Assembly: GCF_037042905.1 (NCBI RefSeq)
Contig: NC_087250.1
Location: forward strand, 18,104,001 to 18,168,000
Source: Lytechinus pictus
Lineage: Eukaryota
Reading direction: 5' to 3'
Length of the DNA stretch: 64,000 nt
Shown here: one piece after another, positions 20,688 through 59,705 of the stretch
Position numbering within the stretch: position 1 is the stretch's first letter
Layout: each line of letters starts with the position of its first letter
Notes under the pieces: generated by a model
Told to the model about the DNA's origin: nothing
Seen by the model: the letters and a program-made list of their open reading frames with translations, nothing else
The model's database searches: none
Program-made: the position numbers and the translations under genes

Positions 20688-20985
20688 CTAAGTGTCGTGA
20701 AATATGAATTCAGCTTCATTTCTTAACCCAACGGTCTCTAAAGCAAGTTGAAGTTTTTTAACCTGTCCACTAGGTCGGACGCGCTTTCTCCAGTCTTGAA
20801 GCATCTCTTTAAGACCTGCATTCGAGGCAATACTTGCAGAAGAGTCTGCTCTGGAAAGATACTTGCTGACCATCGAGTGGGAGAAACCTAGCTGGTAACC
20901 AAGCTCACTTGCATCCTTTATTCCAGAGACTAAACCAGTCAACACCTGTATCACGTCGTTCGAAACGAACCTCAATCGGCCTCTT
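20688..20985 (-). CDS. Last coding exon: C-terminal death domain (DD5)
   Basis: ..ASELGYQLGFS..LKEMLQDWRKR..KLQLALETVGLRNEAE..*; phase-2 acceptor. Confidence 0.85.
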
Positions 20986-30200: not shown

Positions 30201-30252
<52 letters not shown>

Positions 30253-36459: not shown

Positions 36460-36491
<32 letters not shown>

Positions 36492-39400
36492 GGGGGGGGT
36501 TCTCCAGACTCTACATATCTCCCCAGACAAGAAAAAAAAAGTATAGGGGGTCTACATGTATTGGGCTACTTTTCAGAATCTATTGGCCACATCTGCCTCA
36601 TTCTTGGGGAAGTTTTAACATTGAATAGGGAGTTGCCCGCCTGGGGCTCTTTTTAAAATTTCTTACGGGCAGATTGCACAAGAGGTTCTTTGCAAGGACA
36701 GTCTATTTGTGTCGTTGATTTGTAATGTGCCGTATGAGTCGCATTTTTAATATCCATCACATATGAATATAAAAAGATATACATGTAAGCCTAAATCTAT
36801 TTTTTACTTTTTTTTAGGTCTACTATGCCGGGGGGGGGGGTACTTAGATTTGGTTTGGACAAAGGTGTGCGGCTGAAGGTTTGAAACCCGTACCCATATT
36901 TACAGGCCATTTTGGCTAAAAAGGTACCCATTATTAGGGATTTATTACAGGGGCAGATCCAGGATTTCCAAAAGGGGGGGGGGCACATTTTTGCCTGGAA
37001 AACTTGACAAGCAAAAAAAAAAAAGAAAAAGGTTATCGCCCAAAATGTAAGGTAATTTTGTATTTGCACCTAAGACATTGGAGTAGAATATGGACCCATG
37101 TTTAAGGCCAGTATCTAAAAATTGGGACCATGTTCAGGGATTTTCCAGCATAATACCATACCCCATGTTCAGGATTTTTTTTTCCAAAAAAGCGACCCAT
37201 TCTAGCGGCACATCCCCGTATGCCTTATTTTGTGAGTACTTGAAATCGCTTGGGGATTAGTTTAATGCTAACAAGGAGCCGGATTGCTAAATGCACCTTA
37301 TTTTTTTACGGTTATCAATTAAGTTATGAGCTCATAATTACCTGGCTTTCAATTTCTTCTTCCTCACGATGGCACGTGATTGTGACGTCACCAGCCTTTT
37401 TTTCAACATTGAAAGGGACCGAGCGATGACATCTATGGTAAGATTGTTGTCTCGACTCCTCTTGAGTAGCCTACAAAGATGATTACGATTATAATCTATT
37501 TTAATTGTTGAAAAATGAAAAAAAAAAAAAAAAAAAATCGATATTTTATCATTCTTAATAGAAATCTGAAGTATTAATATTCCTAAGACTAATTTTGCCT
37601 GCCTAATTAATATTTGGTGCGGCAGTGCTATTTATTTGTCTGACGCGACCGGAGCTTGAAATCACGACTTCCCGCCGCTTGTGAGTCGGACGCTCTCCTA
37701 TCTGAGCCAAAACAGTTGAAAATATTGATAATATATAATAATGTTATTACCAACATGCAGTTACAGATGTGAAAAGTTACTTTACTTCATTTAATTGTAA
37801 AAAGTATCTTGGTCTTTATTTACAAAGGTGCTAATATATATCTTAGCAGAACTATCTATAACAATGTTGGTGATAAGAGCAACACTGAATATGACATTGA
37901 TAATTATATCAAAAATGATAATGATAACAATAGTAATAATAAGAATATCTATAATAGTGAAATGGTTCAGAGCGCTTCAAATCATCACGTCAAGCAATAG
38001 CATTCAAGTAATTTTGTTCTACCCGCAAACATTCACCTCATCTGGCTGGAGGGTGGAAATTTTCAATCAACATTTTCTCAAATGATAAGGATCTTCCGGT
38101 TTTCAGAGCTGTCTTGATTTGGCGAATGACCGATAATTTTGAACTTATTGTGAGTGACGATGTTTAGTACTGACCGCTTCGTTTCCAGGTAGGTCATTAC
38201 ACAACTGAAGATTAACTGCAAACTCTTGTCCTCTTTCGATCCTGTCTGGGACGTATGGAGTACAAATAAGTTGTTGTCGGATCACCTGTTGTTCAAGAGG
38301 AATCAGAACCCACCACTCTGCACAGTGGCCAATGTACAGCTCAAGATGTCTTTTGTACATTCTGCAGTATGGTGGTTTGTCTGGTGAGCTGGAAGATTGC
38401 TTTATTAGAGTTTTTGGTAGATCTTGTTTTACCAATGCCGATAAGAGAAAAAAGATCAATGGAATGCACTTTATCACAACTTTCAGAAAGTCATTATGGT
38501 TATAAACTGTATAACTATCAGGAACGGTATTATTAGTGACATAATTAGCTCATGAAGGAAGCTGATATATTGAATGATGACACTGCGGTGTTGATTTTTT
38601 TTTATAACAAACACGTGTACACGTTGGTATCAATAATGCACAAAGCATTTTCATTCATTTAAAGCAAGATAAAAGAGCAATGCATAGAAATACGCCTCGG
38701 TCAATGAAGGGCCCTGCCGGGAATCGAACCCCGGACTTTCAGTGTGTAGTCAGGTGCCTTAGACCACTCGGCCGCGGCACCACGCCGTTGATAGTGAAAA
38801 TGATGACGATCGATGCCACTTGTAATTATACTGATTGTAATGATGATCTTAGAATGTCAAATTAGATATTTGGTATATATATACTGTAGGTTAGCTTCAA
38901 AGTCATTAAAAAAAAAAAAATAGTCCTTATGCTTTACTGATACCATAATAGTCCAATCTCAATCTTTATGGACTTACTCGTGATTGAGTCCCACACACGA
39001 CAAACGATGTCTGGTTTCACCTGCTCTGGATTTACGACCAATAAAGAATGTGGTATATTGATCTTAACAGGCTGGTTGAAGATCAAGGTATGAGGGTCAC
39101 ACCTGATCCCGTAGCAGATCAATGATTCACCTTCAGTGACATAAATACCGGGATTGTCTGTAAGGATGGCTAGGGTGAACTGACAAGAGTCATCAGATAG
39201 AACCGCTCCTGGAGGAAGGTACATTGATATTCCATGGTCTTCTAGATTAACTTCCTGACTGGAATTTCTGTTGACTTTGACAGAGGCATCGTTAGAGTTC
39301 GATGGCCGATCTGTGATATATGCACGTATACAAGGTGAACAAAAAGGTCATGGTACACACAATACAGAGGAACAAACCTGTTCCTTAGCCTTGTTATGAT

Positions 39401-42088: not shown

Positions 42089-42119
<31 letters not shown>

Positions 42120-45100
42120 GGAAAAGCGGCGCCTATAGTCTCACTCTGCTATGCAGGTGAGACAAAAAGGAAGCGTTAGGGACATCACCGACTCTTTCAT
42201 ACATGTCACTGATTTGTGCATATAACTTTTTTAGGAAAAATAAGCGAAACTTCAAAATATCATATAATTTTACATTCGATTGTAATAAAATTTTCAATGT
42301 TGTGCATGTTTGATTTTCCTCTATTGAAAATACATGTACATCAAAACCCGTTTGTACTGGAAATTTAGTTTTAAGTAATTGTTCACCTTGCCAATATCAT
42401 CTGTCTGATCATTTCATCCTTTGCATAGTGGATTGGTAGGCAATCTGCTTCATCCTTAATATCAATCCTGGCTCCATGTTCTAAGAGATAGAACACCAAT
42501 GCGTTTTCAGGAGATAACCTGCCACTGTAGTATTCTTTGGATACCTGCAACGGATGATTAATTTAGTTTGTGTGGTAATTATAGTATTGAAAACTAATTA
42601 GTCCATAAAGTGTTGATGTCATTAATTATGTAATAGGCTCAATGATAAAGCAATTTATGGTATGAATTAAATATTTACTTTCTCACAAATTTAATAAAGT
42701 GAAAAATAGTCTCTTATATGCTTTTTCGTTATATGTTTGTATCGTATTGCAATTAGCAGCGGATGCCAGAAATGCCATGATAATCGTACTTCGTTGACTT
42801 AAATGTTTTAAAATCCAAGTGTACACTAAAAATTGAGGCAAAGGTCTTTTCCAAGACTAACCTTTCTGAGTGTTTCGGTGTATTCAACATTCTTTTTCTT
42901 TTGGTAGCATAATTTGATAGCTTTATGAAGACATGTCTGACCGTCATTAGACTGTACATTGAGATCAAATCCTTTAGCAATCATCCTCTCAATGATGGAT
43001 GTAAGTCCGTGCATCACAGCTAGATGGATGGCCACTGAATCATTCTGGATTGACAAAATTATATAAACGTAGTAGAAAAATTAGCATTCTTGTAAATTGT
43101 AGGGAGAGCAGCATAAAATCTTCCATGAATATCAAACTGAAATAATTAACTCTTATTTTTTAATGGTAATCAAAGTACTGTTTTTTCTGTTGTACTGTTT
43201 TCCGAATGTTGCAGAACAAGCAAGTTTGCAAATATACATCAATATTCTATACAGTTTAAAAGGCTCCTTCATTTTCAATTATTTGCATAATGACCAAACG
43301 GCACTTTTTCAGCTATTTATAACTCCGTCAAAGAAAAATTTAAAGGATGTATGTATCGCCTACCTTAGCATCCCTGTTGTCAACTGGAAGATCACATCGT
43401 TGACTGATCAGATATTTGATGACGTCAGTATGGCCTAATCTAGCAGCAATGTGTAATGCAGTCTGACCATTATTATCCTCTTTAACAATCTCAGCTCTCT
43501 TACTGATCAGATATTTGATGACGTCAAGATGCCCATTGGAAGCAGCAATGTGTAATGCAGTCTGACCATCTTTATCCTCCTTATTGACCTTAGCTCCTCC
43601 ACTGATCAGATATTCGATGACGTCAATATGACCACTGGAAGCAGCACTGTGTAATGCAGTCCAACCATTTTTGTCCTTCTTATTGACCTCAGCTCCCTTA
43701 CTGACCAGATATTTCATGACGTCAATATGATCATTGGAAGCAGACCTGTGTAATGCAGTCTGACCATCATTATCCCCATTTTTTACATCAGCTCCTTTAC
43801 TGATCAGATATTTGATGACATCAATATGCCCATCGAAAGCAGCACTGTGTAAAGCAGTCATTCCATTTTTATCCTTCTCATTGATCTCAGCTCCTTCACT
43901 AATCAGATATTTGATGACATTAATATGTCCATTGAAAGCAGCACTGTGTAATGAAATCCAACCACTTTTATCCTTCTTGTTGATCTTAGCTCCCTTAATA
44001 ATAAGATGTTTGATGGCGTCAATATGACCATTGGAAGCAGCACTGTGTAATGCAGTCTCACCATCATTTTCCCCTTTATTGACCTCAGCTCCTTTACTGA
44101 TCAGATAATTGATGACATCAATATGCCCATTGGAAGCAGCAGTGTGTAATGCAGTCCAACCACTTATATCCTCCTTATTGACCTCAGCTCCCTTACTGAT
44201 CAGATATCTGATGACGTCAGTATGACCATTAGAAGCAGCACTGTGTATTGCAGTCCGACCATTATTATACTCCTTATTGACCTCAGCCCCTTCACTGATC
44301 AGATATTTGATGACGTCAGTATGACCATTGGAAGCAGCACTGTGTATTGCAGCCAGACCATCATTATCCTCCTTAACGACCTCAGCTCCCTTACTGATCA
44401 AAAATGTAGTGACGTCAAGATGCCCATTGGAAGCAGCAATGTGTAATGCAGTCCAACCACTTCTATCTTCCTTAATGACCTCAGCTCCCTTACTGATCAG
44501 ATATTTGATGACGTCAATGTGCCCATCGGAAGCAGCACAGTGTAATGCAGTCAAACCACTTCTATCCTCCTTATTGACCTCAGCTCCTTCACTGATCAGA
44601 TATTTGATGACGTCAATATAACCATTGGAAGCAGCACTGTGTAATGCAGTCCCACCACTTTTATCCTCCTTATTGACCTCAGCTCCTTCACTGATCAGAT
44701 ATTTGATGACGTCAGTATGACCATTGGAAGCAGCACAGTGTATTGCAGTCAGACCATCATTATCCTCCTTAAAGACATCAGCTCCCTTATCGATCAGATA
44801 TTTGATGGCATCAATATGCCCATTGGAGGCAGCACTGTGTAATGCAGTCCGACCATCATTAAACTCCTTATCGACCTCAGCCCCTTCACTGATCAGATAT
44901 TTCATGACGTCAATATTACCATTGGAAGCAGCACAGTGTAATGGAGGCCGACCATCATTATCCCCCTTATTGACCTCAGCTCCTTTACTGATCATATGTT
45001 TGATGACATCAATATGCCCATCGAAAGCAGCAATGTGTAATGCAGTCCAACCATTTTTATCCTCCTTATTGACCTCAGCTCCTTCACTGATCAGATATTT

Positions 45101-48100
45101 GATGACGTCAATACGACCAATGGAAACAGCACTGTGTAATGCAGTCTGACCATTATTATCCCCCTTATTGACCTCAGCTCCATGGCTCATCAGATATTTG
45201 ATGACGTCAATACGACCATTCTCAGCAGCACTGTGTAATGCAGTCCGACCATTATTATCCTTCTTATTGACCTCAGTTCCATTACTGATCAGATATTTGA
45301 TGACTTCAATATGGACTAACCTAGAAGCAATGTGTAATTCTGTCTGACCATCTCTTTCCCCCTTATTGACCTCAGCTCCTTCACTGATCAGATATTTGAT
45401 GACGTCAAGATGCCCATTGGAAGCAGCAATGTGTAATGCAGTCTGACAATCTTTATCCCCTTTATTGATCTTAGCTCCTCCACTGATCAGATATTCGATG
45501 ACGTCAATATGACCATTGGAAGCAGCACTATGTAATGCAGTCACACCATTTTTGTCCTTCTTATTGACCTCAGCTCCATTACTGATCAGATATTTGATGA
45601 CTTCAATATGGCCTAACCTAGAAGCAATGTGTAATGCTGTCTGACCATCTCTTTCCCCCTTATTGACCTCAGCTCCTTCACTGATCAGATATTTGATGAC
45701 GTCAAGATGCCCATTGGAAGCAGCAATGTGTAATGCAGTCTGACAATCTTTATCCCCTTTATTGACCTCAGCTCCCTTACTGACCAGATATTTCATGACG
45801 TCAATATGATCATTGGAAGCAGACCTGTGTAATGCAGTCTGACCATCATTATCCCCATTTTTGACATCAGCTCCTTTACTGATCAGATATTTGATGACAT
45901 CAATATGTCCATCGAAAGCAGCACTGTGTAATGCAGTAATTCCACTTTTATCCTTCTCATTGATCTCAGCTCCTTCACTAATCAGATATTTGATGACATT
46001 AATATGTCCATTGAAAGCAGCACTGTGTAATGAAAACCAACCACTTTTATCCTTCTTGTTGATCTTAGCTCCCTTAATAATAAGATGTTTGATGGCGTCA
46101 ATGTGACCATTGGAAGCAGCACTGTGTATGGCAGTCTCACCATCATTTTCCCCTTTATTGACCTCAGCTCCTTTACTGATCAGATAATTGATGACATCAA
46201 TATGCCCATTGGAAGCAGCACTGTGTAATGCAGTCCAACCACTTATATCCTCCTTATTGACCTCAGCTCCCTTACTGATCAGATATCTGATGACGTCAGT
46301 ATGACCATTAGAAGCAGCACTGTGTATTGCAGTCCGACCATTATTATACTCCTTATTGACCTCAGCCCCTTCACTGATCAGATATTTGATGACGTCAGTA
46401 TGACCATTGGAAGCAGCACTGTGTATTGCACTCAGACCATCATTATCCTCCTTAACGACCTCAGCTCCCTTACTGATCAAATATGTGATGACGTCAAGAT
46501 GCCCATTGGAAGCAGCAATGTGTAATGCAGTCCAACCACTTCTATCCTCCTTATTGACCTCAGCTCCTTCACTGATCAGATATTTGATGACGTCAATGTG
46601 CCCATCGGAAGCAGCACTGTGTAATGCAGTCAAACCACTTCTATCCTCCTTATTGACCTCAGCTCCTTCACTGATCAGATATTTGATGACGTCAATACGA
46701 CCATTCTTAGCAGCACTGTGTAATGCAGTCCGACCATTATTATCCTTCTTATTGACCTCAGTTCCTTCACTGATCAGATATTTGATGACGTCAGTATGAC
46801 CATTGGAAGCAGCACAGTGTATTGCAGTCAGACCATCATTATCCTCCTTAACGACCTCAGCTCCCTTATCGATCAGATATTTGATGACATCAATATGCCC
46901 ATTGGAAGCAGCACTGTGTAATGCAGTCCGACCATCATAATACTCCTTATCGACCTCAGCTCCTTCACTGATCAGATATTTCATGACGTCAATATGACCA
47001 TTGGAAGCAGCACAGTGTAATGGAGTCCGACCATCATTATCCCCCTTATTGACCTCAGCCCCTTCACTGATCATATATTTGATGACATCAATATGCCCAT
47101 CGAAACAAGCACTGTGTAATGCAGTCCAACCACTTTTATCCTCCTTATTGAGCTCAGCTCCTTCACTGATCAGATATTTGATGACGTCAAAACGACCAAT
47201 GGAAACAGCACTGTGTAATGCAGTCTGACCATTATTATCCCCCTTATTGACTTCAGCTCCATGGCTGATCAGATATTTGATGACGTCAATACGACCATTC
47301 TTAGCAGCACTGTGTAATGCAGTCCGACCATTATTATCCTTCTTATTGACCTCAGCTCCATTACTGATCAGATATTTGATGACTTCAATATGCCCTAACC
47401 TAGAAGCAATGTGTAATTCTGTCTGACCATCTCTTTCCCCCTTATTGACCTCAGCTCCTTCACTGATCAGATATTTGATGACGTCAAGATGCCCATTGGA
47501 AGCAGCAATGTGTAATGCAGTCTGACCATCTTTATCCCCTTTATTAACCTCAGCTCCTTTACTGATCAGATATTTGTTGACATCAAGATGCCCATTGGAA
47601 GCAGCAATGTGTAATGCAGTCTGACCATCTTTATCCCCTTTATTGACCTTAGCTCCTTCACTGATCAGATATTTGATGACGTCAGTATGACCATTGGAAG
47701 CAGCAAAGTGTATTGCAGTCAGACCATCATTATCCTCCTTAACGACCTCAGCTCCCTTACTGATCAGATATGTGATGACGTCAAGATACCCATTGGAAGC
47801 AGCACTGTGTAATGCAGTCCAACCGCTTCTATCCTCCTTAATGACCTCAGCTCCCTTACTGATCATATATTTGATGACGTCAATGTGCCCATTCGAAGCA
47901 GCACTGTGTAATGCAGTCAAACCATTTCTATCTTCCTTATTGACCTCAGCTCCTTCACTGATCAGATATTTGATGACGTCAATATGCCCATTGGAAGCAG
48001 CACTGGGTAATGCAGTCCCACCACTTTTATCCTCCTTTTTGACCTCAGCTCCTTCACTGATCAAATATTTGATGACATCAATATGCCCATTGGAAGCAGC

Positions 48101-51100
48101 ACTGTGTAATGCATTCCGACCATCATTATACTCCTTATCGACCTCAGCTCCTTCACTGATCAGATATTTGATGACGTCAATGTGCCCATCGGAAGCAGCA
48201 CTGTGTAATGCAGTCCAACCACTTCTATCCTCCTTATTGACCTCAGCTCCTTCACTGATCAGATATTTGATGACGTCAATATGACCATTGGAAGCAGCAC
48301 TGTGTAATGCAGTCCCACCACTTTTATGCTCCGTATTGACCTCAGCTCCTTCACTGATCAGATATTTGATGACGTCAGTATGACCATTGGAAGCAGCACA
48401 GTGTATTGTAGTCAGACCATCATTATCCTCCTTAACGACCTCAGCTCCCTTATTGATCAGATATTTGATGACATCAATATGCCCATTGGAAGAAGCACTG
48501 TGTAATGCAGTCCGACCATTATTATACTCCTTATCGACCTCAGCTCCTTCACTGGTCAGATATTTCATGACGTCAATATGACCATTGGAAGCAGCACAGT
48601 GTAATGGAGTCCGACCATCATTATCCCCCTTATTGACCTCAGCCCCTTCACTGATCATATGTTTGATGACATCAATATGCCCATCGAAAGCAGCACTGTG
48701 TAATGCAGTCCAACCACTTTTATCCTCCTTATTGACCTCAGCTCCTTCACTGATCAGATATTTGATGACGTCAATACGACCAATGGAAACAGCACTGTGT
48801 AATGCAGTCTGACCATTATTATCCCCCTTATTGACCTCAGCTCCATGGCTGATCAGATATTTGATGACGTCAATGCGACCATTCTTAGCAGCACTGTATA
48901 ATGCAGTCCGATCATTATTATCCTTCTTATTGACCTCATCTCCATTACTGATCAGATATTTGATTACTTCAATATGGCCTAACCTAGAAGCAATGTGTAA
49001 AGCTGTCTGACCATCTCTTTCCCCCTTATTGACCTCAGCTCCTTCACTGATCAGATATTTGATGACGTCAAGATGCCCATTGGAAGCAGCAATGTGTAAT
49101 GCAGTCTGACCATCTTTATCCCCTTTATTAACCTGAGCTCCTTCACTGATCAGATATTTGATGACGTCAAGATGCCCATTGGAAGCAGCAATGTGTAATG
49201 CAGTCTGACCATCTTTATCCCCTTTATTGACCTTAGCTCCTTCACTGATCAGATATTTGATGACGTCAGTATGACCATTGGAAGCAGCAAAGTGTATTGC
49301 AGTCAGACCATCATTATCCTCCTTAACGACCTCAGCTCCCTTACTGATCAGATATGTGATGACGTCAAGATACCCATTGGAAGCAGCACTGTGTAATGCA
49401 GTCCAACCGCTTCTATCCTCCTTAATGACCTCAGCTCCCTTACTGATCATATATTTGATGACGTCAATGTGCCCATTCGAAGCAGCACTGTGTAATGCAG
49501 TCAAACCATTTCTATCTTCCTTATTGACCTCAGCTCCTTCACTGATCAGATATTTGATGACGTCAATATGCCCATTGGAAGCAGCACTGGGTAATGCAGT
49601 CCCACCACTTTTATCCTCCTTTTTGACCTCAGCTCCTTCACTGATCAAATATTTGATGACATCAATATGCCCATTGGAAGCAGCACTGTGTAATGCATTC
49701 CGACCATCATTATACTCCTTATCGACCTCAGCTCCTTCACTGATCAGATATTTGATGACGTCAATGTGCCCATCGGAAGCAGCACTGTGTAATGCAGTCC
49801 AACCACTTCTATCCTCCTTATTGACCTCAGCTCCTTCACTGATCAGATATTTGATGACGTCAATATGACCATTGGAAGCAGCACTGTGTAATGCAGTCCC
49901 ACCACTTTTATGCTCCGTATTGACCTCAGCTCCTTCACTGATCAGATATTTGATGACGTCAATATGACCATTGGAAGCAGCACTGTGTAATGCAGTCCCA
50001 CCACTTTTATGCTCCGTATTGACCTCAGCTCCTTCACTGATCAGATATTTGATGACGTCAGTATGACCATTGGAAGCAGCACAGTGTATTGTAGTCAGAC
50101 CATCATTATCCTCCTTAACGACCTCAGCTCCCTTATTGATCAGATATTTGATGACATCAATATGCCCATTGGAAGAAGCACTGTGTAATGCAGTCCGACC
50201 ATTATTATACTCCTTATCGACCTCAGCTCCTTCACTGGTCAGATATTTCATGACGTCAATATGACCATTGGAAGCAGCACAGTGTAATGGAGTCCGACCA
50301 TCATTATCCCCCTTATTGACCTCAGCCCCTTCACTGATCATATGTTTGATGACATCAATATGCCCATCGAAAGCAGCACTGTGTAATGCAGTCCAACCAC
50401 TTTTATCCTCCTTATTGACCTCAGCTCCTTCACTGATCAGATATTTGATGACGTCAATACGACCAATGGAAACAGCACTGTGTAATGCAGTCTGACCATT
50501 ATTATCCCCCTTATTGACCTCAGCTCCATGGCTGATCAGATATTTGATGACGTCAATGCGACCATTCTTAGCAGCACTGTATAATGCAGTCCGATCATTA
50601 TTATCCTTCTTATTGACCTCATCTCCATTACTGATCAGATATTTGATTACTTCAATATGGCCTAACCTAGAAGCAATGTGTAAAGCTGTCTGACCATCTC
50701 TTTCCCCCTTATTGACCTCAGCTCCTTCACTGATCAGATATTTGATGACGTCAAGATGCCCATTGGAAGCAGCAATGTGTAATGCAGTCTGACCATCTTT
50801 ATCCCCTTTATTAACCTGAGCTCCTTCACTGATCAGATATTTGATGACGTCAAGATGCCCATTGGAAGCAGCAATGTGTAATGCAGTCTGACCATCTTTA
50901 TCCCCTTTATTGACCTTAGCTCCTTCACTGATCAGATATTTGATGACGTCAGTATGACCATTGGAAGCAGCAAAGTGTATTGCAGTCAGACCATCATTAT
51001 CCTCCTTAACGACCTCAGCTCCCTTACTGATCAGATATGTGATGACGTCAAGATACCCATTGGAAGCAGCACTGTGTAATGCAGTCCAACCGCTTCTATC

Positions 51101-54100
51101 CTCCTTAATGACCTCAGCTCCCTTACTGATCATATATTTGATGACGTCAATGTGCCCATTCGAAGCAGCACTGTGTAATGCAGTCAAACCATTTCTATCT
51201 TCCTTATTGACCTCAGCTCCTTCACTGATCAGATATTTGATGACGTCAATATGCCCATTGGAAGCAGCACTGGGTAATGCAGTCCCACCACTTTTATCCT
51301 CCTTTTTGACCTCAGCTCCTTCACTGATCAAATATTTGATGACATCAATATGCCCATTGGAAGCAGCACTGTGTAATGCATTCCGACCATCATTATACTC
51401 CTTATCGACCTCAGCTCCTTCACTGATCAGATATTTGATGACGTCAATGTGCCCATCGGAAGCAGCACTGTGTAATGCAGTCCAACCACTTCTATCCTCC
51501 TTATTGACCTCAGCTCCTTCACTGATCAGATATTTGATGACGTCAATATGACCATTGGAAGCAGCACTGTGTAATGCAGTCCCACCACTTTTATGCTCCG
51601 TATTGACCTCAGCTCCTTCACTGATCAGATATTTGATGACGTCAGTATGACCATTGGAAGCAGCACAGTGTATTGTAGTCAGACCATCATTATTCTCCTT
51701 AACGACCTCAGCTCCCTTATTGATCAGATATTTGATGACATCAATATGCCCATTGGAAGAAGCACTGTGTAATGCAGTCCGACCATTATTATACTCCTTA
51801 TCGACCTCAGCTCCTTCACTGGTCAGATATTTCATGACGTCAATATGACCATTGGAAGCAGCACAGTGTAATGGAGTCCGACCATCATTATCCCCCTTAT
51901 TGACCTCAGCCCCTTCACTGATCATATGTTTGATGACATCAATATGCCCATCGAAAGCAGCACTGTGTAATGCAGTCCAACCACTTTTATCCTCCTTATT
52001 GACCTCAGCTCCTTCACTGATCAGATATTTGATGACGTCAATACGACCAATGGAAACAGCACTGTGTAATGCAGTCTGACCATTATTATCCCCCTTATTG
52101 ACCTCAGCTCCATGGCTGATCAGATATTTGATGACGTCAATGCGACCATTCTTAGCAGCACTGTATAATGCAGTCCGATCATTATTATCCTTCTTATTGA
52201 CCTCATCTCCATTACTGATCAGATATTTGATTACTTCAATATGGCCTAACCTAGAAGCAATGTGTAAAGCTGTCTGACCATCTCTTTCCCCCTTATTGAC
52301 CTCAGCTCCTTCACTGATCAGATATTTGATGACGTCAAGATGCCCATTGGAAGCAGCAATGTGTAATGCAGTCTGACCATCTTTATCCCCTTTATTAACC
52401 TGAGCTCCTTCACTGATCAGATATTTGATGACGTCAAGATGCCCATTGGAAGCAGCAATGTGTAATGCAGTCTGACCATCTTTATTCCCTTTATTGACCT
52501 TAACTCCTACACTAATCAGATAGTTGATGACGTCAGTATGACAATTGGAAGCAGCACTGTGTAATGCAGTCAAACCATTTCTAGCTTCCTTATTGACCTC
52601 AGCTCCTTCACTGATCAGATATTTGATGACGTCAATATGACCATCGGAAGCAGCACTGTGTAATGCAGTCCCACCAGTTTTATCCTCCTTATTGACCTCA
52701 GCTCCTTCACTGATCAGATATCTGATGACGTCAGTATGACCCTTAGAAGCAGCACTGTGTATTGCAGTCCGACCATAATCATCCTCCTTATTGACCTCAG
52801 CTCCTTCACTGATCAGATATTTGATGACGTCAGTATGACCATTGGAAGCAGCACAGTGTATTGCAGTCAGACCATCATTATCCTCCTTATTGACCTCAGC
52901 TCCCTTACTGATCAAATATGTGATGACGTTAAAATGCCCATTGGAAGCAGCAATGTGTAATGCAGTCACGCCAATTTTATTCTCCTTATTGACCTCAGCT
53001 CCTTGACTGATCAGATATTTGATGACGTCAGTATGACCATTGGAAGCAGCACAGTGTATTGCAGTCAGACCATTATTATCCTCCTTAACGACCTCAGCTC
53101 CCTTATCGATCAGATATTTGATGACATCAATATGCCCATTGGAAGCAGCACTGTGTAATGCACTCCGACCATCATTATACTCCTTATCGACCTCAGCTCC
53201 TTGACTGATCAGATATTTGATGACGTCATTATGACCATTAGAAGCAGCACAGTGTATTGCAGTCAGACCATTATTATCCTCCTTAACGACCTCAGCTCCC
53301 TTATCGATTAGATATTTGATGACATCAATATGCCCACTGGAAGCAGCACAGTGTAATGGATTCTGACCATTATTATCCCCCTTATTGACCTCAGCCCCTT
53401 CACTGATCATATGTTTGATGACATCAATATGCCCATCGAAAGCAGCACTGTGTAATGCAGTCCAACCACTTTTATCCTCCTTAATGACCTCAGCTCCCTT
53501 ACTGATCAGATATTTGATAACTTCAATATGCCCTAACCTAGAAGCAATGTGTAATGCAGTCTGGCCATCTTTATCCCCCTTAATGACCTCAGCTCTTTCA
53601 TTGATCAGATATTCGATGACGTTAATATGACCATTTAAAGCAGCACAGTGTAATGGAGTCCGACCATCATTATCCCCCTTATTGACCTCAGCCCATTCAC
53701 TGATCATATGTTTGATGACATCAATATGCCCATCGAAAGCAGCACTGTGTAATGCAGTCCAACCACTTTTATCCTCCTTATTGACCTCAGCTCCTTCACT
53801 GATCAGATATTTCATGACGTCAAGATTACCATTGGAAGAAGCACAGTGTAATGGATTTTGACCATTATTATCCCCCTTATTGACCTCAGCCCCTTCACTG
53901 ATCAGATATTTGATGACATCAATATGCCCATCGAAAGCAGCACTGTGTAATGCAGTCCAACCACTTTTATCCTCCTTATTGAGCTCAGATCCTTCACTGA
54001 TCAGATATTTGATGACGTCAATACGACCAATGGAAACAGCACTGTGTAATGCAGTCTGACCATTATTATCTCCCTTATTGACCTCAGCTCCATGGCTGAT

Positions 54101-57100
54101 CAGATATTTGATGACGTCAATACGACCATTCTTAGCAGCACTGTGTAATGCAGTCCGATCATTATTATCCTTCTTATTGACCTCAGCTCCATTACTGATC
54201 AGATATTTGATGACTTCAATATGGCCTAACCTAGAAGCAATGTGTAATGCTGTCTGACCATCTCTTTCCCCCTTATTGACCTCAGCTCCATTACTGATCA
54301 GATATTTGATGACTTCAATATGGCCTAACCTAGAAGCAATGTGCAATGCTGTCTGACCATCTCTTTCCCCCTTATTGACCTCAGTTCCTATACTGGTCAG
54401 ATATTTGATGACGTCAAGATGCATATTGGAAGCAGCACTGTGTAATGCAGTCCAACCATTTCTATCTTCTTTATTGACCTCAGCTCCTTCACTGAACAGA
54501 TATTTGATGACATCAATATCGGAAGCAGCACTGTGTAATGCAGTCCCACCACTTTTATCCTCCTTTTTTACCTCAGCTCCTTCACTTATCAGATATTTAA
54601 TGACGTCAGTATGACCATTAGAAGCAGCACAGTGTATTGCAGTCAGACCATCATTATCCTCCTTAACGACCTCAGCTCCCTTACTAATCAGATATTTCAT
54701 GACCTCAAGATTAGCATTGGAAGCAGCACTGTGCAATGCAGTCCGACCATTATTATCCTCCTTATCGACCTCAGCTCCCTTACTGATCAGATATTTGATA
54801 ACTTCAATATGCCCTAACCTAGAAGCAATGTGTAATGCAGTCTGGCCATCTTTATCCCCCTTAATGACCTCAGCTCTTTCATTGATCAGATATTCGATGA
54901 CATTAATATGACAATTGAAAGCAGCAAAGTGTAATGGAGTCTGACCATTATTATCCCCCTTATTGACATCAGCCCCTTCACTGATCAGATGTTTGATGAC
55001 ATCAATATGCCCATCGAAAGCAGCACTGTGTAATGCAGTCCAACCACTTTTATCCTCCTTATTGAGCTCAGCTCCTTCACTGATCAGATATTTGATGACG
55101 TCAATACTACCAATGGAAACAGCACTGTGTAATGCAGTCTGACCATTATTATCCCCCTTATTGACCTCAGCTCCATGGCTGATCAGAGATTTGATGACGT
55201 CAATACGACCATTCTTAGCAGCACTGTGTAATGCAGTCCGACCATTATTATCCTTCTTATTGACCTCAGCTCCATTACTGATCAGATATTTAATGACTTC
55301 AATATGGCCTAACCTAGAAGCAATGTGTAATTCTGTCTGACCATCTCTTTCCCCCTTATTGACCTCAGCTCCTTTACTGATCAGATATTTGATGACGTCA
55401 AGATGCCCATTGGAAGCAGCAATGTGTAATGCAGTCTGACCATCTTTATCCCCTTTATTAACCTTAGCTCCTTCACTGATCAGATATTTGATGACGTCAA
55501 GATGCCCATTGGAAGCAGCAATGTGTAATGCAGTCTGACGATCTTTATCCCCTTTATTGGCCTTAGCTCCTTCACTGATCAGATATTTGATGACGTCAGT
55601 ATGACCACTGGAAGCAGCACTGTGTATTGCAGTCATACCATCATTATCCTCCTTAACGACCTCAGCTCCCTTACTGTTCATATATGTGATGACGTCAAGA
55701 TGCCCATTGGAAGCAGCACTGTGTAATGCAGTCCAACCGCTTCTATCCTCCTTAATGACCTCAGCTCCCTTACTGATCAGATATTTGATGACGTCAATGT
55801 GCCCATTCGAAGCAGCACTGTGTAATGCAGTCAAACCATTTCTATCTTCCTTATTGACCTCAGCTCCTCCACTGATCAGATATTTGATGACGTCAATATG
55901 CCCATCGGAAGCAGCACTGTGTAATGCAGTCCCACCACTTTTATCTTCCTTATTGACCTCAGCTCCTTCACTGATCAGATATCTGATGACGTCAGTATGA
56001 CCATTAGAAGCAGCACTTTGAATTGCAGTCCGACCATCTTTATCCTCCTTATTGACCTCAGCTCCTTCACTGATCAGATATTTGATGGCGTCAGTATGAC
56101 CATTGGAAGCAGCACAGTGTATTGCAGTCAGACCATCATTATCCTCCTTAACGACCTCAGCTCCCTTATCGATCAGATATTTGATGACATCAATATGCCC
56201 ATTGGAAGCAGCACTGTGTAATGCACTCCGACCATCATTATACTCCTTATCGACCTCAGCTCCTTCACTGATCAGATATTTCATAACCTCAAGATTACCG
56301 TTGGAAGCAGCACTGTGTAATGCAGTCCGACCATTATTATCCTCCTTATCGACCTCAGCTCCCTTACTGATCAGATATTTGATGACGTCAAGATGCCAAT
56401 TGCAAGCAGCACTGTGTAATGCAGTCCGACCATTATTAGCCTCCTTAAAGACCTCAGCTCCCTTACTGATGAGATATTTGATAACTTCAATATGCCCTAA
56501 CCTAGAAGCAATGTGTAATGCAGTCTGGCCATCTTTATCCCCCTTAATGACCTCAGCTCTTTCATTGATCAGATATTCGATGACGTTAATATGACCATTG
56601 AAAGCAGCACAGTGTAATGGAGTCTGACCATTATTATCCCCCTTATTGACCTCAGCCCCTTCACTGATCATATGTTTGATGACATCAATATGCCCATCGA
56701 AAGCAACACTGTGTAATACAGTCCAACCCCTTTTATCCTCCTTATTGAGCTCAGCTCCTTCACTGATCAGATATTTGATGACGTCAATACGACCATTGGA
56801 AGCAGCACTGTGTAATGTAGTCTGACTATTATTATCCCCCTTATTGACCTCAGCTCCATGGCTGATCAGACATTTGATGACGTCAATAGGACCATTCTTA
56901 GCAGCACTGTGTAATGCAGTCCGACCATTATTATCCTTCTTATTGACCTCACCTCCATTACTGATCAGATATTTGATGACTTCAATATGGCCTAACCTAG
57001 AAGCATTGTGTACTGCAGTCCGACCATTATTATCCTTCTTATTGACCTCAGCTCCTTTACTAATCAGATATTTAATGACGTCAAGATGCCCATTGGAAGT

Positions 57101-57868
57101 AGCAATGTGTAATGCAGTCTGACCATCTTTATCCCCTTTATTGACCTCAGCTCCTACACTGATCAGATATTTGATGACGTCAGTATGACCATTGGAAGCA
57201 GCACTGTGTATTGCAGTCCGACCATCATTATCCCCTTTATTGACCTCAGCTCCTTCACTGATCAGATATTTGATGACGCCAAGATGCCCATTGGAAGCAG
57301 CCGTGTGTAACGCAGTCTGACCATCTTTATCACCTTTATTTCCCTCAGTTCCTTCACTGATCAGATATTTGATGACGTCAATGTGACCATTGGAAGCAGC
57401 ACTGTGTAATGCAGTCCAACCATTATTGTCCTCCTTAACGACCTCAGCACTCTTATTGATCAGATATTTGATGACGTCAAGATGCCCATTGGAAGCAGCA
57501 CTGTGTAATGCAGTCCGACCATTATTATCCTCCCTAAGGATCTCAGCTCCCTTACTGATCAGATATTTGATGACGTCAATGTGGCCAAACCTAGCAGCAC
57601 TGTGTAATGCAATCCGACCAATATTATCCTCCTTATTGACCTCTGCTCCTTGACTGATCAGATATTTTATGACGTCAATATGACCATTGGAAGCAGCAAT
57701 TTCTAATGAAGTCCGACCAACTTTATCTTTCTTATTGACCTCTGCTCCCTTCCCGATCAGAGTTTCAATGACGTCAATTTGAGAATGGAAAGCAGCCCTG
57801 TGTAATGCAGTCCAACCACTATTATCCGCCTTATTGACATCAGCTCCTTGGCTTATCAAATAATTCAT
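20688..57868 (-). CDS. Giant ankyrin-repeat / ZU5-UPA / multi-death-domain protein: 21 exons, ~6,070 aa from ATG 57868; start uncertain, possibly a 5'-damaged allele
   Basis: Hand-spliced GT-AG exons with matching phases: 57868-43364, 43044-42862, 42544-42387, 40222-40188, 39310-38978, 38422-38175, 37470-37342, 36312-36150, 35804-35759, 35409-35123, 34451-34436, 34152-33893, 32983-32855, 32626-32333, 26242-25994, 24802-24458, 24184-23964, 23600-23466, 23051-22907, 21869-21842, 20985-20688; no internal stop seen. Confidence 0.8.
21842..21869 (-). CDS. 28-nt linker exon (VEPDYEKTQ)
   Basis: TTTAACAG acceptor, GTAAG donor; bridges phase 1 to phase 2. Confidence 0.7.
22131..22323. other. Assembly gap (193 N) inside an intron
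   Basis: Run of N. Confidence 1.
22525..22809 (-). mobile_element. Tc1/mariner-like terminal arm (same family as 7200)
   Basis: Ends TTTTTTCTGGGACGCACTG|TA. Confidence 0.7.
22907..23051 (-). CDS. Exon, UPA-like domain 2, C-terminal part
   Basis: VHVCSLLSGGCNTINIILPPSTDDKIVRVSIEQGQ..; phase 0 to 1. Confidence 0.75.
23291..23357 (-). mobile_element. Isolated L2-type 3' tail remnant
   Basis: Minus strand GCGCCTTGAGCACTCTGCCGCAGAGTGGATTTGGCGCTTTATAAAT..TATTATTA resembles the LINE tail at 15040-15107. Confidence 0.6.
23466..23600 (-). CDS. Exon, UPA-like domain 2, middle part
   Basis: GVRGQNYSLSEPFYEVTTVIKFNLESAEDDIKISC..; phase 0 to 0. Confidence 0.75.
23964..24184 (-). CDS. Exon, end of ZU5-2 and start of UPA-2
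   Basis: ..FEISEDIVTFSTRHLQYFAL..; phase 1 to 0. Confidence 0.78.
24458..24802 (-). CDS. Exon, ZU5 domain 2
   Basis: GLIDHEGGELR..VSIPSGAIP..LITPPIRC..LLKPATIVLPH. Confidence 0.88.
24840..25127 (-). mobile_element. Full-length tRNA-derived SINE with an L2-like 3' tail
   Basis: Minus-strand head GGGCGCGACGTGGTCTGGTGG..GGTCGTGGGTTCGAATC; tail GCGCCTCGGA..GGCGCTATACAAAT..(ATT)n. Confidence 0.82.
25994..26242 (-). CDS. Exon, death-like domain 4
   Basis: DLIDLSQRLDLPASEI..ILHMLQRWVKQGGTRLRLLEIVQAFNFNDAAEHI; phase 1 to 1. Confidence 0.8.
26610..27720 (+). repeat. ~75-bp minisatellite (about 14-15 units) in the left arm; inverted copies at 30945-31210
   Basis: GGAGGACAATGTAAGATGAGATGAGGCAAGTGTGCAGTGAGGTTTTTTCAAAAGAGGAGATAATACAAATATATAT. 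Confidence 0.92.
30199..30249. repeat. (TA)n microsatellite
   Basis: Direct reading. Confidence 0.95.
31573..32208. mobile_element. MITE with ~200-bp imperfect TIRs, TA-flanked
   Basis: TTCACAAGCGCACT..CAATTGGTTCCGGAA..GTCACAAAA vs TTTTGTGAC..TTCCGGAACCAATTG..AGTGCGCTTGTGAA. Confidence 0.75.
32333..32626 (-). CDS. Exon, divergent death-like domain 3
   Basis: ..LALQVANALRLDVNDII..LAWKLLHQWCRRL..; phase 1 to 1. Confidence 0.75.
32855..32983 (-). CDS. Exon, acidic/Pro-rich linker
   Basis: DDENSDDVTPLYPDVNPDPSPQEPEEDEDEENEDWKIIEYSES; phase 1 to 1. Confidence 0.75.
33009..33331. mobile_element. Harbinger-like MITE
   Basis: Imperfect TIR GGTCAGTATTCTGAAGTCGGGTT / AACCTGACTTCGGAAAACGGGCC; AGA on both flanks. 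Confidence 0.6.
33893..34152 (-). CDS. Exon, death domain 2 (absent from the ORF track)
   Basis: EISDCTLLQFSRHIIKEKFYEIGRQLGFDEIELHHIEHRSLYNRKDANIQMLSLWK..; phase 2 to 1. Confidence 0.85.
34436..34451 (-). CDS. Predicted 16-nt microexon (DIDPTE)
   Basis: AAG|ATATTGACCCGACTGA|GTAAGT; supplies the required phase 1 to 2 shift. Confidence 0.6.
35123..35409 (-). CDS. Exon, death domain 1
   Basis: ..QFYDLGIALGFTIAELDRIEYRRFGDRQQATYDMLLAWRGR..; phase 2 to 1. Confidence 0.88.
35759..35804 (-). CDS. 46-nt linker exon
   Basis: DGPVCQFPSKQTDVT; TTAG acceptor, GTAAGT donor; phase 1 to 2. Confidence 0.7.
36150..36312 (-). CDS. Exon, UPA-like domain 1, C-terminal part
   Basis: IVSLRDLLAKISQCISIYVPPSEDDLNFAVITITITQAG..; phase 0 to 1. 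Confidence 0.75.
37342..37470 (-). CDS. Exon, UPA-like domain 1, middle part
   Basis: ATQEESRQQSYHRCHRSVPFNVEKKAGDVTITCHREEEEIESQ; phase 0 to 0. Confidence 0.75.
38175..38422 (-). CDS. Exon, end of ZU5-1 and start of UPA-1
   Basis: ..PYCRMYKRHLELYIGHCAEWWVLIP..CTPYVP..; phase 1 to 0. Confidence 0.78.
38630..38781 (-). mobile_element. tRNA-derived SINE (second family)
   Basis: Minus strand GGTGCCGCGGCCGAGTGGTCTAAGGCAC..GGGGTTCGATTCCCGGC (A and B boxes); imperfect cloverleaf. Confidence 0.7.
38978..39310 (-). CDS. Exon, ZU5 domain 1
   Basis: VNLEDHGISMYLPPGAV..LICYGIRCDPHTLIFNQPVKINIPH; phase 1 to 1. Confidence 0.85.
40188..40222 (-). CDS. 35-nt linker exon (LPSLDGVQSTR)
   Basis: CTGCAG acceptor, GTAAG donor; phase 2 to 1. 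Confidence 0.72.
40605..40947. mobile_element. hAT-like MITE nested in a Kolobok-like element (~40450-42330)
   Basis: TIR TAGCGTACCTA / TAGGTACGCTA; 8-bp TSD AATATGCA / AATATACA. Confidence 0.7.
41194..42168. mobile_element. Helentron/HINE-like non-autonomous element carrying ~160-190-bp tandem repeats
   Basis: Subterminal IR GTCTCACCTGCAT / ATGCAGGTGAGAC, terminal hairpin, (GCC)n; GACCTTTGACC recurs at about 41409, 41570, 41734 and 41925. Confidence 0.75.
42387..42544 (-). CDS. Exon, terminal divergent ankyrin/cap repeat
   Basis: VSKEYYSGRLSPENALVFYLLEHGARIDIKDEADCLPIHYAKDEMIRQMILA; phase 0 to 2. Confidence 0.82.
42862..43044 (-). CDS. Exon, divergent C-terminal ankyrin repeats
   Basis: NDSVAIHLAVMHGLTSIIERMIAKGFDLNVQSNDGQTCLHKAI..; phase 0 to 0. 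Confidence 0.85.
43364..57868 (-). CDS. Giant single exon encoding about 146 tandem ankyrin repeats (4,835 aa)
   Basis: 33-aa unit GxTALHxAAxxGHxDVIKYLISxGAEVNKxDxx; AAG|GTAGG donor at 43364/43363. Confidence 0.93.
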
Positions 57869-59705
57869 GACGTCAAACCGACCAAACTTAGCAGAACGGT
57901 TTAATGCAGTCCAACTATCATTATCCTCCTTATTGACCTCAGCTCCTTCACTGATCAGATATTTAATGACGGCAATATGACCATTGGAAGCAGCACTGTG
58001 TATTGCAGTCCGACCATCATTATCCTCCTAATTGACCTCAGCCCCTTCAACTGATCAGATATTTGATGACGTCAATATGACTCATCTCAGCAGCACGGTG
58101 TAGTGCAGTCCAACCATCATTATCCTCCTTATTGACCTCAGCTCCTTCACTAATCAGATATTTGATGACGTCAATATGACCATTGGAAGCAGCACTTTGT
58201 ATTGCAGTCCGACCATCATTATCCTTCTTATTGACCTCAGCTCCCTCACTGATCAGATATTTAATGACGGCAATATGACCATTGGGAGCAGCACGGTGTA
58301 TTGCAGTCCGACCATTATTATCCTCCTTATTGACCTCAGCCCCTTCACTATTCAGATATTTGATGACGTCAATATGACCATTGGAAGCAGCACTGTGTAT
58401 TGCAGTCCGACCATCATTATCTTCCTTATGGACCTCAGCTCCTTCACTAATCAGATATTTGATGACGTCAATATGACCATTGGAAGCAGCACTGTGTATT
58501 GCAGTCCGACCATCATTATCTTCCTTATTGACCTCAGCTCCCTTACTGATCAGATATTTATTAACGGCAATATGAACATTGGAAGCAGCACGGTGTATTG
58601 CAGTCCGACCATCATTATCCTCCTTATTGACCTCAGCCCCTTCACTGATCAGATATTTGATGACCTCAATATGACTCATCTCAGCAGCACGGTGTAGTGC
58701 AGTCCAACCATGATTATCCTCCTTATTGACCTCAGCTCCTTCACTGATCAGATATTTGATGACGTCAATATGACCATTGGAAGTAGCACTGTGTAATGCA
58801 GTCCGACCATTATTATCCTCCTTAGCGACCTCAGCTCCCATACTGATCAGATATTTGATGACGTCAATATGACCTTTGGAAGCAGCACTGTGTAATGCAG
58901 TCAAACCACCATTATCCTCCTTATTGACCTCAGCTCCCTCACTGATTAGATATTTGATGACATCAATATGACCATTGGAAGCAGCACTGTGTAATGCAGT
59001 CAAACCACCATTATCCTTCATATTGAACTCAGCTCCCTTACTGATCAGATATTTAATGACATCAATATGACCAATTGAAGCAGTACTGTGTATTGCAGTC
59101 CGACAATCATTATCCTCCTTATTGACCTCAGCTCCTTCACTGATCAGATATTTGATAACGTCAATATGACCATTGGAAGCAGCACTGTGTAATGCAGTCC
59201 GACCATCATTATCCTCCTTATTAACCTCAGCTCCTTCACTGATCAGATATTTGATGACGTCAATATGACTATTGAAGGCAGCACTGTGAAATGCAGTCCG
59301 ACCATTATTATCCTCCATATTGACCTAATCTCCTTGACTGATAGATATTTGATGACTTCAATATGATAATTTTGAGCAGCACGGTCTAATGAAGTCAAGC
59401 CATTATTATCCTCTTTTTTTAACCTTAGCTCCTTGACTTATCAGATATTTGATGACGTCAATATGACAATCGAAAGCAGCAATATGTAGTGCAGTCTGAC
59501 CATTATCATCCTCCTAATATTGACCTCAGCTCCTTGATTGAAATTTGATGACTTCAATATGACCATTTTGAGTAGCACGGTGTAATGCAATCCGACCAAC
59601 ATGACCAATTTTATCCTCCTTATTGACCTCTGCTCCTTGAATTGTAATATTTTTAATGAAGACAATGACCTTTCTGAGCAGAATCGTGTAATGAAGTCCG
59701 ACCAT
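43395..59705 (-). repeat. 99-bp coding tandem array (~165 units) with higher-order duplications
   Basis: Near-identical blocks recur at offsets of 1584, 1683 and 2079 bp (16, 17 and 21 x 99). Confidence 0.95.

What the first reader, a model, noticed from the sequence alone, without database searches (positions are those of the whole stretch)
43395..57868. Repeat variation concentrated at DARPin-like binding positions (a natural repeat code)
Seen: the framework (TALH, G, DVIKYLIS, GAEV) is nearly invariant. Variation clusters at the hairpin (DNN/DND/DKS/DRS/DKD/ERD/YND/HKS), the residue after G (R/W/Q/L/G/V), the residue after H (S/I/C/F/R) and the pair before G (SN/SD/FD/FN/RL/KN/SI). Known: these approximate the beta-turn and helix-1 surface positions randomised in designed ankyrin repeat proteins, and the pattern parallels variable residues in fungal NLR repeats, lamprey VLRs and TALE RVDs. 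Inference: the concave surface is under selection for binding diversity.
Basis: partly seen in the sequence, partly recalled or inferred. Interest (0 to 1): 0.82.

Follow-up and report, generated by a model that had tools for sequence, protein, structure and literature searches.

The report
Giant sea-urchin ankyrin array: ordinary variability pattern
A 14.5-kb exon of a sea-urchin ankyrin-like gene encodes 146 near-identical ankyrin repeats whose differences sit at the usual binding-surface positions, but this pattern is seen in ankyrin repeats generally, was multiplied here by block duplication, and is not a special repeat code.

Summary
The minus-strand ORF 43340-57868 holds 146 in-register 33-aa ankyrin units. 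Variability peaks at positions 5, 26, 3, 10, 2, 31, 14, 13 and 33, and all seven DARPin library positions are among the top nine (permutation p = 1e-5).

The pattern is not special to this gene:
- The same profile appears in 1725 repeats from 120 unrelated ankyrin proteins (Spearman 0.75).
- It also appears in sea-urchin relatives (Spearman 0.74).

The 146 units are not independent samples:
- They fall into about 35 types, copied as 16/17-unit and 21-unit higher-order blocks.
- Three blocks are nearly identical.
- The variable positions are tightly linked to each other.

Evidence on selection is mixed:
- Between types, nonsynonymous divergence at the DARPin positions is about 1.9 times synonymous divergence (bootstrap CI 1.2-3.3). 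This points to selection for, or maintenance of, distinct surfaces.
- The tree-based test weakens without the CpG codon at position 5.
- Recombination among units is evident.
- Changes since amplification look neutral (85 N : 24 S) and are evenly spread. Core-damaging changes were copied along with the blocks.

The gene's current state is uncertain. The 5' edge is broken and RNA support for this copy is close to nil.

Verdict: a new, extreme member of a known kind.

Other first-stage notes of this scan cover the same stretch (blocks, 5' decay).

The parts
43340..57868 (-). Open reading frame of 4842 aa made almost entirely of ankyrin repeats. Its first Met is an I20-to-M change inside a unit.
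   Evidence: Pfam Ank_2 E = 1e-144 on the first 330 aa.
43379..57826 (-). 146 in-register 33-aa (99-bp) ankyrin units: unit 0 at 57728-57826 through unit 145 at 43379-43477.
   Evidence: There are 108 distinct DNA units, with a mean of 16 nt differences per 99.
47537..52486 (-). Units 54-103: three near-identical copies of a 16/17-unit higher-order block (type string DDFCCEAGABB(B)LBBHA).
   Evidence: Most homologous units differ by 0 nt.
43676..46546 (-). Units 114-121 and 135-142: two copies of a block repeated at a lag of 21 units (types HAKMNOPQ).
54467..54559 (-). Unit 33, carrying the only indel in the ORF: an in-frame 6-bp deletion that removes G15-H16.
43362..43363 (-). Likely splice donor (AAG|GTAGGC). 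The exon ends in phase 0 at 43364, after ...CDLPVDNRDAK.
   Evidence: Sequence read directly. Use of the donor is not shown by RNA.
57869..58046 (-). Broken junction between the two ORFs: an extra T near 58049-58052 causes a frameshift, and there is an in-frame TAG at 58028-58030.
58047..59318 (-). Upstream ORF of 423 aa: 13 near-consensus ankyrin units, out of frame with the main ORF.
59319..59602 (-). Decayed 5' units of the same 99-bp array, with stops and frameshifts.
42387..43042 (-). Two downstream exons (42860-43042 and 42387-42542), joined by a GT-AG intron in contigs from RNA libraries.
   Evidence: records 7 and 10. The contigs are 95-97% identical, so they may come from a sister copy.
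38934..39312 (-). ZU5-domain exon.
   Evidence: Pfam ZU5 E = 8e-8. An RNA contig piece covers 39200-39312.
24387..24875 (-). Second ZU5-domain exon.
   Evidence: Pfam ZU5 E = 2e-13
20688..20975 (-). Death-domain-like exon.
   Evidence: Pfam Death E = 0.0016, 19 bits, below the gathering score of 22.6

Best explanation
This is the ankyrin-repeat exon of a sea-urchin ankyrin-like gene (ANK array, then ZU5, ZU5 and a death domain).

The exon was inflated by unequal crossing-over in 99-bp register. Single units were copied first, then blocks of 16/17 and 21 units. The result is 146 in-frame units plus about 18 decayed units at the 5' edge.

The positional pattern comes from the constraints of the ankyrin fold acting on a founder set of roughly 17-35 unit types. 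Buried framework residues are purged of change over time. Residues of the beta-turn and helix-1 surface differ between types, and at about twice the synonymous rate. So selection either favoured distinct surface residues or protected them against gene conversion.

Block amplification then multiplied these types. The apparent richness of 146 'variants' is mostly copy number.

Mutations that arose after amplification are spread evenly and behave neutrally.

What is shown and what is inferred:
- Shown: the anatomy, the positional profile, its generic nature, the block structure, and the two layers of substitution.
- Inferred: selection on the surfaces in the older layer, and protein binding along the concave groove feeding ZU5/death-domain signalling.
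- Uncertain: whether this copy is functional today.
For: - Anatomy.
- Block structure: with about 35 clusters at 6 nt or less.
- Linkage of variable positions: 61 signatures in 146 units, mutual-information z up to 12.8.
- Generic profile: Spearman 0.75 against 1725 repeats of 120 unrelated proteins, and 0.74 against 14 sea-urchin relatives that share top positions 2, 3, 5, 10, 13, 14 and 33.
- Older layer: pN at the DARPin positions is 0.37 against pooled pS of 0.19, ratio 1.93 (CI 1.2-3.3). The other 26 positions give 0.71. ML omega is 2.0 against 0.87.
- Recent layer: 85 N: 24 S, with 32 of 85 in variable sites against 28 expected.
- Core-damaging changes were copied with the blocks.
- The ORF is kept open: 0 nonsense changes against 8-15 expected from about 390 events.
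- Fold: AF2 pLDDT 94.5 and a match to ankyrin-1 with TM 0.90.
- Relatives: S. purpuratus and Lytechinus 'ankyrin-1/2/3-like' ANK+ZU5+Death proteins, 40-57% identical.
- Elevated dN/dS between repeats within a protein is a general rule (PMC5120217).
Against: - The excess of dN over dS rests on only about 21 synonymous sites per unit.
- Gene conversion is evident: 53% of site pairs show all four gametes, rising with distance. It could erase synonymous differences without any positive selection.
- The 5' edge is broken.
- Two raw RNA-seq runs give almost no reads on the exons.
- Zero stops in the recent layer is only weakly significant (P = 0.015-0.1). The array may therefore be a recently dead gene.
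- The three identical blocks could partly be an assembly artefact.
- No binding partner is known.
Confidence: 0.6

Rival explanations
1. The array is an active diversity generator, an animal counterpart of the highly conserved ANK/WD/TPR repeats of fungal NOD-like receptors. Unequal crossing-over keeps reshuffling units, and positive selection keeps renewing the concave-surface residues. Individuals would then carry different binding solenoids coupled to death-domain signalling.
For: - dN exceeds dS at the a priori binding positions.
- Units are mosaic and recombination is evident.
- Block duplications are very recent, with 0 nt differences.
- The gene has a death-domain partner architecture.
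- Fungal ANK repeats show the same combination, with selected sites on the concave face (PMC4986451).
Against: - The youngest substitutions are not focused on the surface positions and look neutral. At 38%, the share of nonsynonymous changes in the variable sites is well below the roughly 55% expected if the older regime still held.
- Units with G4D+H9Y or H9P were amplified.
- Unit-to-unit amino-acid identity is 68%, below the 85% that defines the fungal class (PMC4986451).
- No NACHT or NB-ARC domain was seen in the window.
- Repeat-number polymorphism was not tested.
- Expression of this copy is unproven.
Confidence: 0.15
2. The array is a recently inactivated, decaying gene copy. The positional pattern is a fossil of the functional ancestor, and the long ORF is still open only because the array is young.
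For: - A frameshift and a nonsense codon lie at the 5' junction, and further 5' units are decayed.
- Overall omega is about 1.0-1.1.
- The recent layer is neutral and evenly spread.
- 29% of units have a core change.
- Raw RNA-seq depth on the exons is close to zero.
- Another decayed copy of a huge ankyrin exon is reported elsewhere in this genome (unchecked).
Against: - There are no stops or frameshifts in 14.5 kb, where 8-15 nonsense changes are expected overall (P = 3e-4 to 3e-7) and 2-4 in the recent layer (P = 0.015-0.1).
- The splice donor and the downstream ZU5 and death-domain exons are intact.
- Omega near 1 between repeats is normal for live repeat proteins (PMC5120217).
- Only two tissues or libraries were sampled.
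Confidence: 0.22
3. The pattern is purely mutational, from CpG decay and neutral drift, with no selection involved.
For: - Position 5 is CGG/CAG/TGG, and position 16 is CAT/CGT.
- The array has CpG o/e of 0.37 and TpG+CpA o/e of 1.48.
- The tree-based LRT drops to p = 0.06 without position 5.
Against: - Positions 2, 3, 10, 13, 14, 26, 31 and 33 have no CpG.
- The tree-free ratio stays at 1.85 (CI 1.18-3.16) without position 5.
- Framework positions show omega of 0.7, and nonsense changes are absent. Selection is therefore acting.
Confidence: 0.03

Closest known systems
Generic ankyrin repeats and the designed libraries derived from them (DARPins; ANK-N5C)
   Same: Same 33-aa fold and register. 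The same positions are variable: 2, 3, 5, 10, 13, 14, 33 and 26. Correlation with unrelated ankyrin proteins is 0.75. The library designers chose those positions precisely because they are variable and surface-exposed in natural repeats (PMC4308713, PMC9611651).
   Different: This is a natural array of 146 units, against 2-5 units in the libraries. Its residue repertoire is narrow and mostly one nucleotide step from the consensus codon. The positions are linked into types rather than independently randomised.
Highly internally conserved ANK/TPR/WD repeats of fungal NOD-like receptors (Podospora; PMC4986451)
   Same: Near-identical tandem repeats, signs of recombination between units, variable sites on the beta-hairpin and inner helix, and dN above dS at those sites.
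   Different: Unit identity is 68% rather than 85% or more. No NACHT or NB-ARC domain was seen. Repeat-number polymorphism was not tested. The recent substitutions are not focused. The partner domains here are ZU5 and death, and the organism is an animal. The array is about ten times longer.
Canonical ankyrins (AnkR/B/G) and sea-urchin 'ankyrin-1/2/3-like' ANK-ZU5-Death proteins
   Same: ANK solenoid followed by ZU5 and death domains. The closest named relatives are S. purpuratus and Lytechinus proteins, 40-57% identical with the same framework motif. The best structural matches are ankyrin-1 and ankyrin-B.
   Different: Canonical ankyrins have 24 diverged repeats that are conserved between species. 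The sea-urchin relatives have about 10-25. This gene has 146 (164 with the decayed edge), homogenised and organised in higher-order blocks. Its unit types show no significant match to individual canonical repeats.
TALE repeat-variable di-residues; lamprey VLR
   Same: Only the general idea: near-identical repeats with a few variable surface residues.
   Different: Residues are not chosen independently per repeat. No linear target is known. There is no sign of somatic cassette assembly. The variable set is about 10 positions, not a di-residue.

Membership tests
Ankyrin repeat (Pfam Ank/Ank_2) | 33-residue helix-turn-helix-hairpin unit that matches the family profile | tested here: met
   Ank_2 E = 1.4e-144 and Ank E = 1e-90 on the first 330 aa. 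AF2 gives two helices per unit with pLDDT 94.5. Foldseek matches ankyrin-1 with TM 0.90.
Ankyrin-type ANK-ZU5-UPA-Death architecture | ZU5 domain(s) downstream of the ANK solenoid on the same strand | tested here: met
   ZU5 at 38934-39224 (E = 8e-8) and at 24387-24875 (E = 2e-13). Physical linkage in a single transcript is not shown for this copy.
Ankyrin-type ANK-ZU5-UPA-Death architecture | C-terminal death domain | tested here: inconclusive
   Pfam Death scores 19 bits at 20688-20975, below the gathering score of 22.6.
Ankyrin-type ANK-ZU5-UPA-Death architecture | 24 individually conserved repeats | tested here: not met
   There are 146 homogenised units. No unit type matches a canonical repeat beyond chance.
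Binding-surface positions of designed ankyrin libraries | Variability concentrated at positions 2, 3, 5, 13, 14, 33 (and 26), or at 2, 3, 5, 10, 13, 33 | tested here: met
   All seven DARPin positions are in the top nine by entropy (permutation p = 1e-5). The exact DARPin numbering comes from established knowledge (Binz et al. 2003). The ANK-N5C positions were read in PMC4308713.
Fungal-NLR-type hypervariable repeats with high internal conservation | At least 85% amino-acid identity between units | tested here: not met
   Mean identity between distinct units is 68%. Only duplicated blocks exceed 85%.
Fungal-NLR-type hypervariable repeats with high internal conservation | Positive selection at concave-face sites | tested here: inconclusive
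   The tree-free ratio is 1.93 (CI 1.2-3.3), and ML omega is 2.0 with p = 0.005. Without the CpG site p = 0.06, recombination is present, and the recent layer is unfocused.
Fungal-NLR-type hypervariable repeats with high internal conservation | Repeat-number polymorphism between individuals | not tested
   This needs long reads from several individuals.
Fungal-NLR-type hypervariable repeats with high internal conservation | STAND NTPase (NACHT/NB-ARC) in the same protein | tested here: not met
   No such ORF was found on the minus strand of the window. Sequence beyond 64000 was not seen.
TALE-like repeat code | Independent per-repeat choice of specificity residues that read a linear target | tested here: not met
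   Variable positions are strongly linked and inherited as types. Whether a linear target exists cannot be tested here.

The most novel reading that the evidence does not exclude
Sea-urchin ANK-ZU5-death genes may use in-register unequal crossing-over of 99-bp units and 1.6-kb blocks as a germline (or even somatic) generator of individual-specific ankyrin binding solenoids. Surface residues would be kept diverse by selection. This would be an animal analogue of fungal NLR repeat diversification, wired to death-domain signalling.
Probability: 0.12. Interest if true: 0.7.

Novelty: new member of a known kind. Interest (0 to 1): 0.3.

Why it matters
The pattern of variation repeats what is already known about ankyrin repeats. 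That knowledge is the very basis on which the designed libraries were built, so the finding as written adds little.

Two things are worth keeping:
- The object itself. It is one of the longest homogeneous ankyrin arrays seen, at 146 in-frame units, or about 4-5 superhelical turns if it folds like other ankyrin solenoids (an estimate from general knowledge, not computed here). It has a clear higher-order block structure inside a coding exon.
- The two-layer signal. The older layer shows surface-focused change with dN above dS, and the younger layer is neutral. Concerted evolution keeps synonymous divergence unsaturated here, so repeat-by-repeat selection can be measured, which ordinary ankyrin proteins do not allow. 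With population data, this locus could test whether animals use repeat shuffling to diversify intracellular binding proteins.

Tried and rejected
Change counts came from treekit.changes.
2. The first generic control used a one-unit HMM and suffered from alignment-end artefacts. I replaced it with a three-unit HMM and took the middle unit.
3. I tested whether the unit types descend from individual repeats of canonical ankyrin, because the F type 'QTALHIASRLGHIEV' resembles repeat 15. A column-shuffle null gave a maximum score at least as high as observed (8) in 423 of 500 shuffles, so I rejected the idea.
4. A pure CpG explanation accounts only for positions 5 and 16.
5. A search for giant relatives found no close homologue among proteins of 2.6-8.5 thousand aa. 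The best were 29-37% identical.
6. A literature search for sea-urchin ANK/death-domain expansions in the held library found nothing specific.
7. The RNA check gave no junction read for the donor at 43363, and the raw reads had almost no depth on the exons.
8. Mapping variable sites onto model coordinates was not possible, because the tool returns only secondary structure. Placement on the concave face rests on the register plus published library designs.

Full report
**What is there**

Tandem Repeats Finder reports a single 99-bp array at 43403-59602, with 163.7 copies and 84% matches. On the minus strand an ORF of 4842 codons runs from 57868 to 43340. Cut in the register D1...E33, it gives 146 units of exactly 33 residues. 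The only indel is an in-frame 6-bp deletion in unit 33, at 54467-54559.

Pfam scores the sequence as ankyrin repeats (Ank_2 E = 1e-144 on 330 aa). The closest solved proteins by sequence are NOMPC, ankyrin-1/2 and DARPins, aligned in the canonical register. An AlphaFold2 model of ten units has mean pLDDT 94.5, with helix 1 at unit positions 7-14 and helix 2 at 17-25. It superposes on ankyrin-1 with TM 0.90.

The ORF ends at a good splice donor, AAG|GTAGGC, at 43363. Further down the same strand lie two ZU5 exons and a weak death-domain exon.

The nearest named relatives are sea-urchin (Strongylocentrotus, Lytechinus) 'ankyrin-1/2/3-like' ANK+ZU5+Death proteins. They are 40-57% identical and share the framework xNDGxTALHxAAxxGHLDVxKYLISQGAEVNKG, but have only about 10-25 repeats.

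Framework residues are 84-98% invariant. Entropy peaks at positions 5, 26, 3, 10, 2, 31, 14, 13, 33 and 17.

The seven positions of the DARPin library (2, 3, 5, 13, 14, 33, plus 26) all fall in the top nine (permutation p = 1e-5). The DARPin numbering is from established knowledge (Binz et al. 2003). Six randomised positions per module are confirmed in PMC9611651. Position 10, the residue after H, is one of the positions randomised in the ANK-N5C library, whose designers chose high-entropy positions on beta-turn 1 and helix 1 (PMC4308713).

The concentration is about two-fold, not absolute.

**The pattern is generic**

I extracted 1725 middle repeats from 120 unrelated long ankyrin proteins: bacterial proteins, vertebrate ankyrins, and insect and fungal proteins. 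Their positional entropy correlates with this array at Spearman 0.75 (p = 5e-7). Their top positions are 5, 14, 10, 13, 17, 2, 33 and 3. Fourteen sea-urchin relatives give 0.74 and share 2, 3, 5, 10, 13, 14 and 33. This is the property of natural repeats from which the designed libraries were derived, so it does not single out this gene.

**The units are not independent**

Single-linkage clustering at 6 nt or less gives about 35 types. Written as letters, the array reads as repeated blocks: DDFCCEAGABB(B)LBBHA three times with almost no differences (units 54-103, 47537-52486), older copies of the same block upstream, and HAKMNOPQ twice at a lag of 21 units.

There are only 61 seven-residue signatures among the 146 units, and the variable positions are strongly linked (mutual-information z up to 12.8). 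That is inheritance of types by duplication, not a per-repeat code.

Recombination between units is also evident. All four gametes are present in 53% of informative site pairs, rising from 43% at under 20 nt to 70% at over 80 nt.

**Selection**

Overall dN/dS between units is about 1:
- pairwise estimate 1.03;
- event counts on a tree 0.98;
- ML 1.11.

This agrees with the general rule for repeats within proteins (PMC5120217).

The sites differ, however:
- At the a priori DARPin positions the ML omega is 2.0 (LRT against 1, p = 0.005). At the other 26 positions it is 0.87.
- A tree-free estimate on one representative per type gives pN/pS of 1.93 (bootstrap over units and codons, CI 1.2-3.3, P(ratio at or below 1) = 0.002). 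It is 1.85 without position 5, and 0.71 for the rest.

The caveats are real:
- Position 5 is CGG/CAG/TGG, that is, the two CpG transitions of CGG.
- The array has CpG o/e of 0.37, against 0.68 in the rest of the window.
- Without position 5 the tree-based LRT falls to p = 0.06.
- Only about 21 synonymous sites per unit carry the denominator.
- Gene conversion could erase synonymous differences while selection merely preserves old surface residues.

I therefore read the older layer as evidence that distinct surfaces matter. I do not read it as proof of continuing positive selection.

**The young layer looks different**

Within clusters of 3 nt or less there are 85 nonsynonymous and 24 synonymous changes, close to the neutral ratio. 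Only 32 of the 85 fall in the 11 variable positions, against 28 expected if the spread were even. The share rises to 50% within clusters of 5 nt or less and to 58% within clusters of 7 nt or less.

Units with G4D+H9Y or H9P were copied three times along with their block. This is what delayed purging of framework damage would produce, or relaxed constraint. It is not what surface-targeted diversification would produce.

**Is the gene alive?**

For:
- There are no nonsense or frameshift changes in 14.5 kb, where 8-15 nonsense changes are expected from about 390 events (P = 3e-4 to 3e-7).
- In the young layer the expectation is only 2-4 (P = 0.015-0.1).

Against:
- The array's 5' edge is broken by an extra T near 58049-58052 and a TAG at 58028-58030, with decayed units beyond.
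- Two raw RNA-seq runs put almost no reads on the exons.
- Contigs from RNA libraries that show spliced downstream exons are only 95-97% identical and may come from a sister copy.

**Verdict**

The mapping to binding positions is correct but generic. Selection on the surfaces is supported for the founder types but not for the present. The comparison with TALE or VLR 'codes' fails on the test of independence.

The nearest known parallel is the highly conserved ANK repeats of fungal NLRs (PMC4986451). Two of its defining features are not met here, namely 85% unit identity and a NACHT/NB-ARC domain. The third, repeat-number polymorphism, could not be tested.

Noticed in passing
window 41179-42300: A dispersed repeat (tandem periods 163 and 192 bp) lies in the intron below the array. 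It has 500-1400x depth on both strands in two raw RNA-seq runs, while the neighbouring exons have about zero. Many reads run on into A-rich tails at 41194 and 42168. It looks like an abundantly transcribed SINE-like or satellite-like family.
   Followed up: no
window 57869-59602: The 5' edge of the array is broken. An extra T near 58049-58052 and a TAG at 58028-58030 separate a 13-unit ORF (58047-59318) from the 146-unit ORF, and further 5' units are decayed. The 13 upstream units are close to the consensus and lack the type diversity of the main array.
   Followed up: partly
window 43379-57868: CpG o/e is 0.37 inside the array against 0.68 in the rest of the window, and TpG+CpA o/e is 1.48. 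The exon looks heavily methylated in the germline.
   Followed up: partly
window 47537-52486: Three copies of a 1.6-kb block are identical or nearly so. This is either a very recent duplication or an assembly problem, and it could not be checked against DNA reads.
   Followed up: no
window 12068-14953 (+): An intact 961-aa LINE ORF2 with endonuclease and reverse-transcriptase domains (Pfam E = 3e-13 and 3e-33).
   Followed up: no
window 26827-27527 and 30878-31243: A low-complexity minisatellite gives long spurious ORFs ('SSYIVLH...') and a GC-skew spike of +0.375 at 26-28 kb.
   Followed up: no
window 20688-39312 (-): Two ZU5 exons lie 14 kb apart, with a death-domain-like ORF between them (25860-26150) and another after them (20688-20975). 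Either the ZU5-death module is duplicated or a second gene lies downstream.
   Followed up: no
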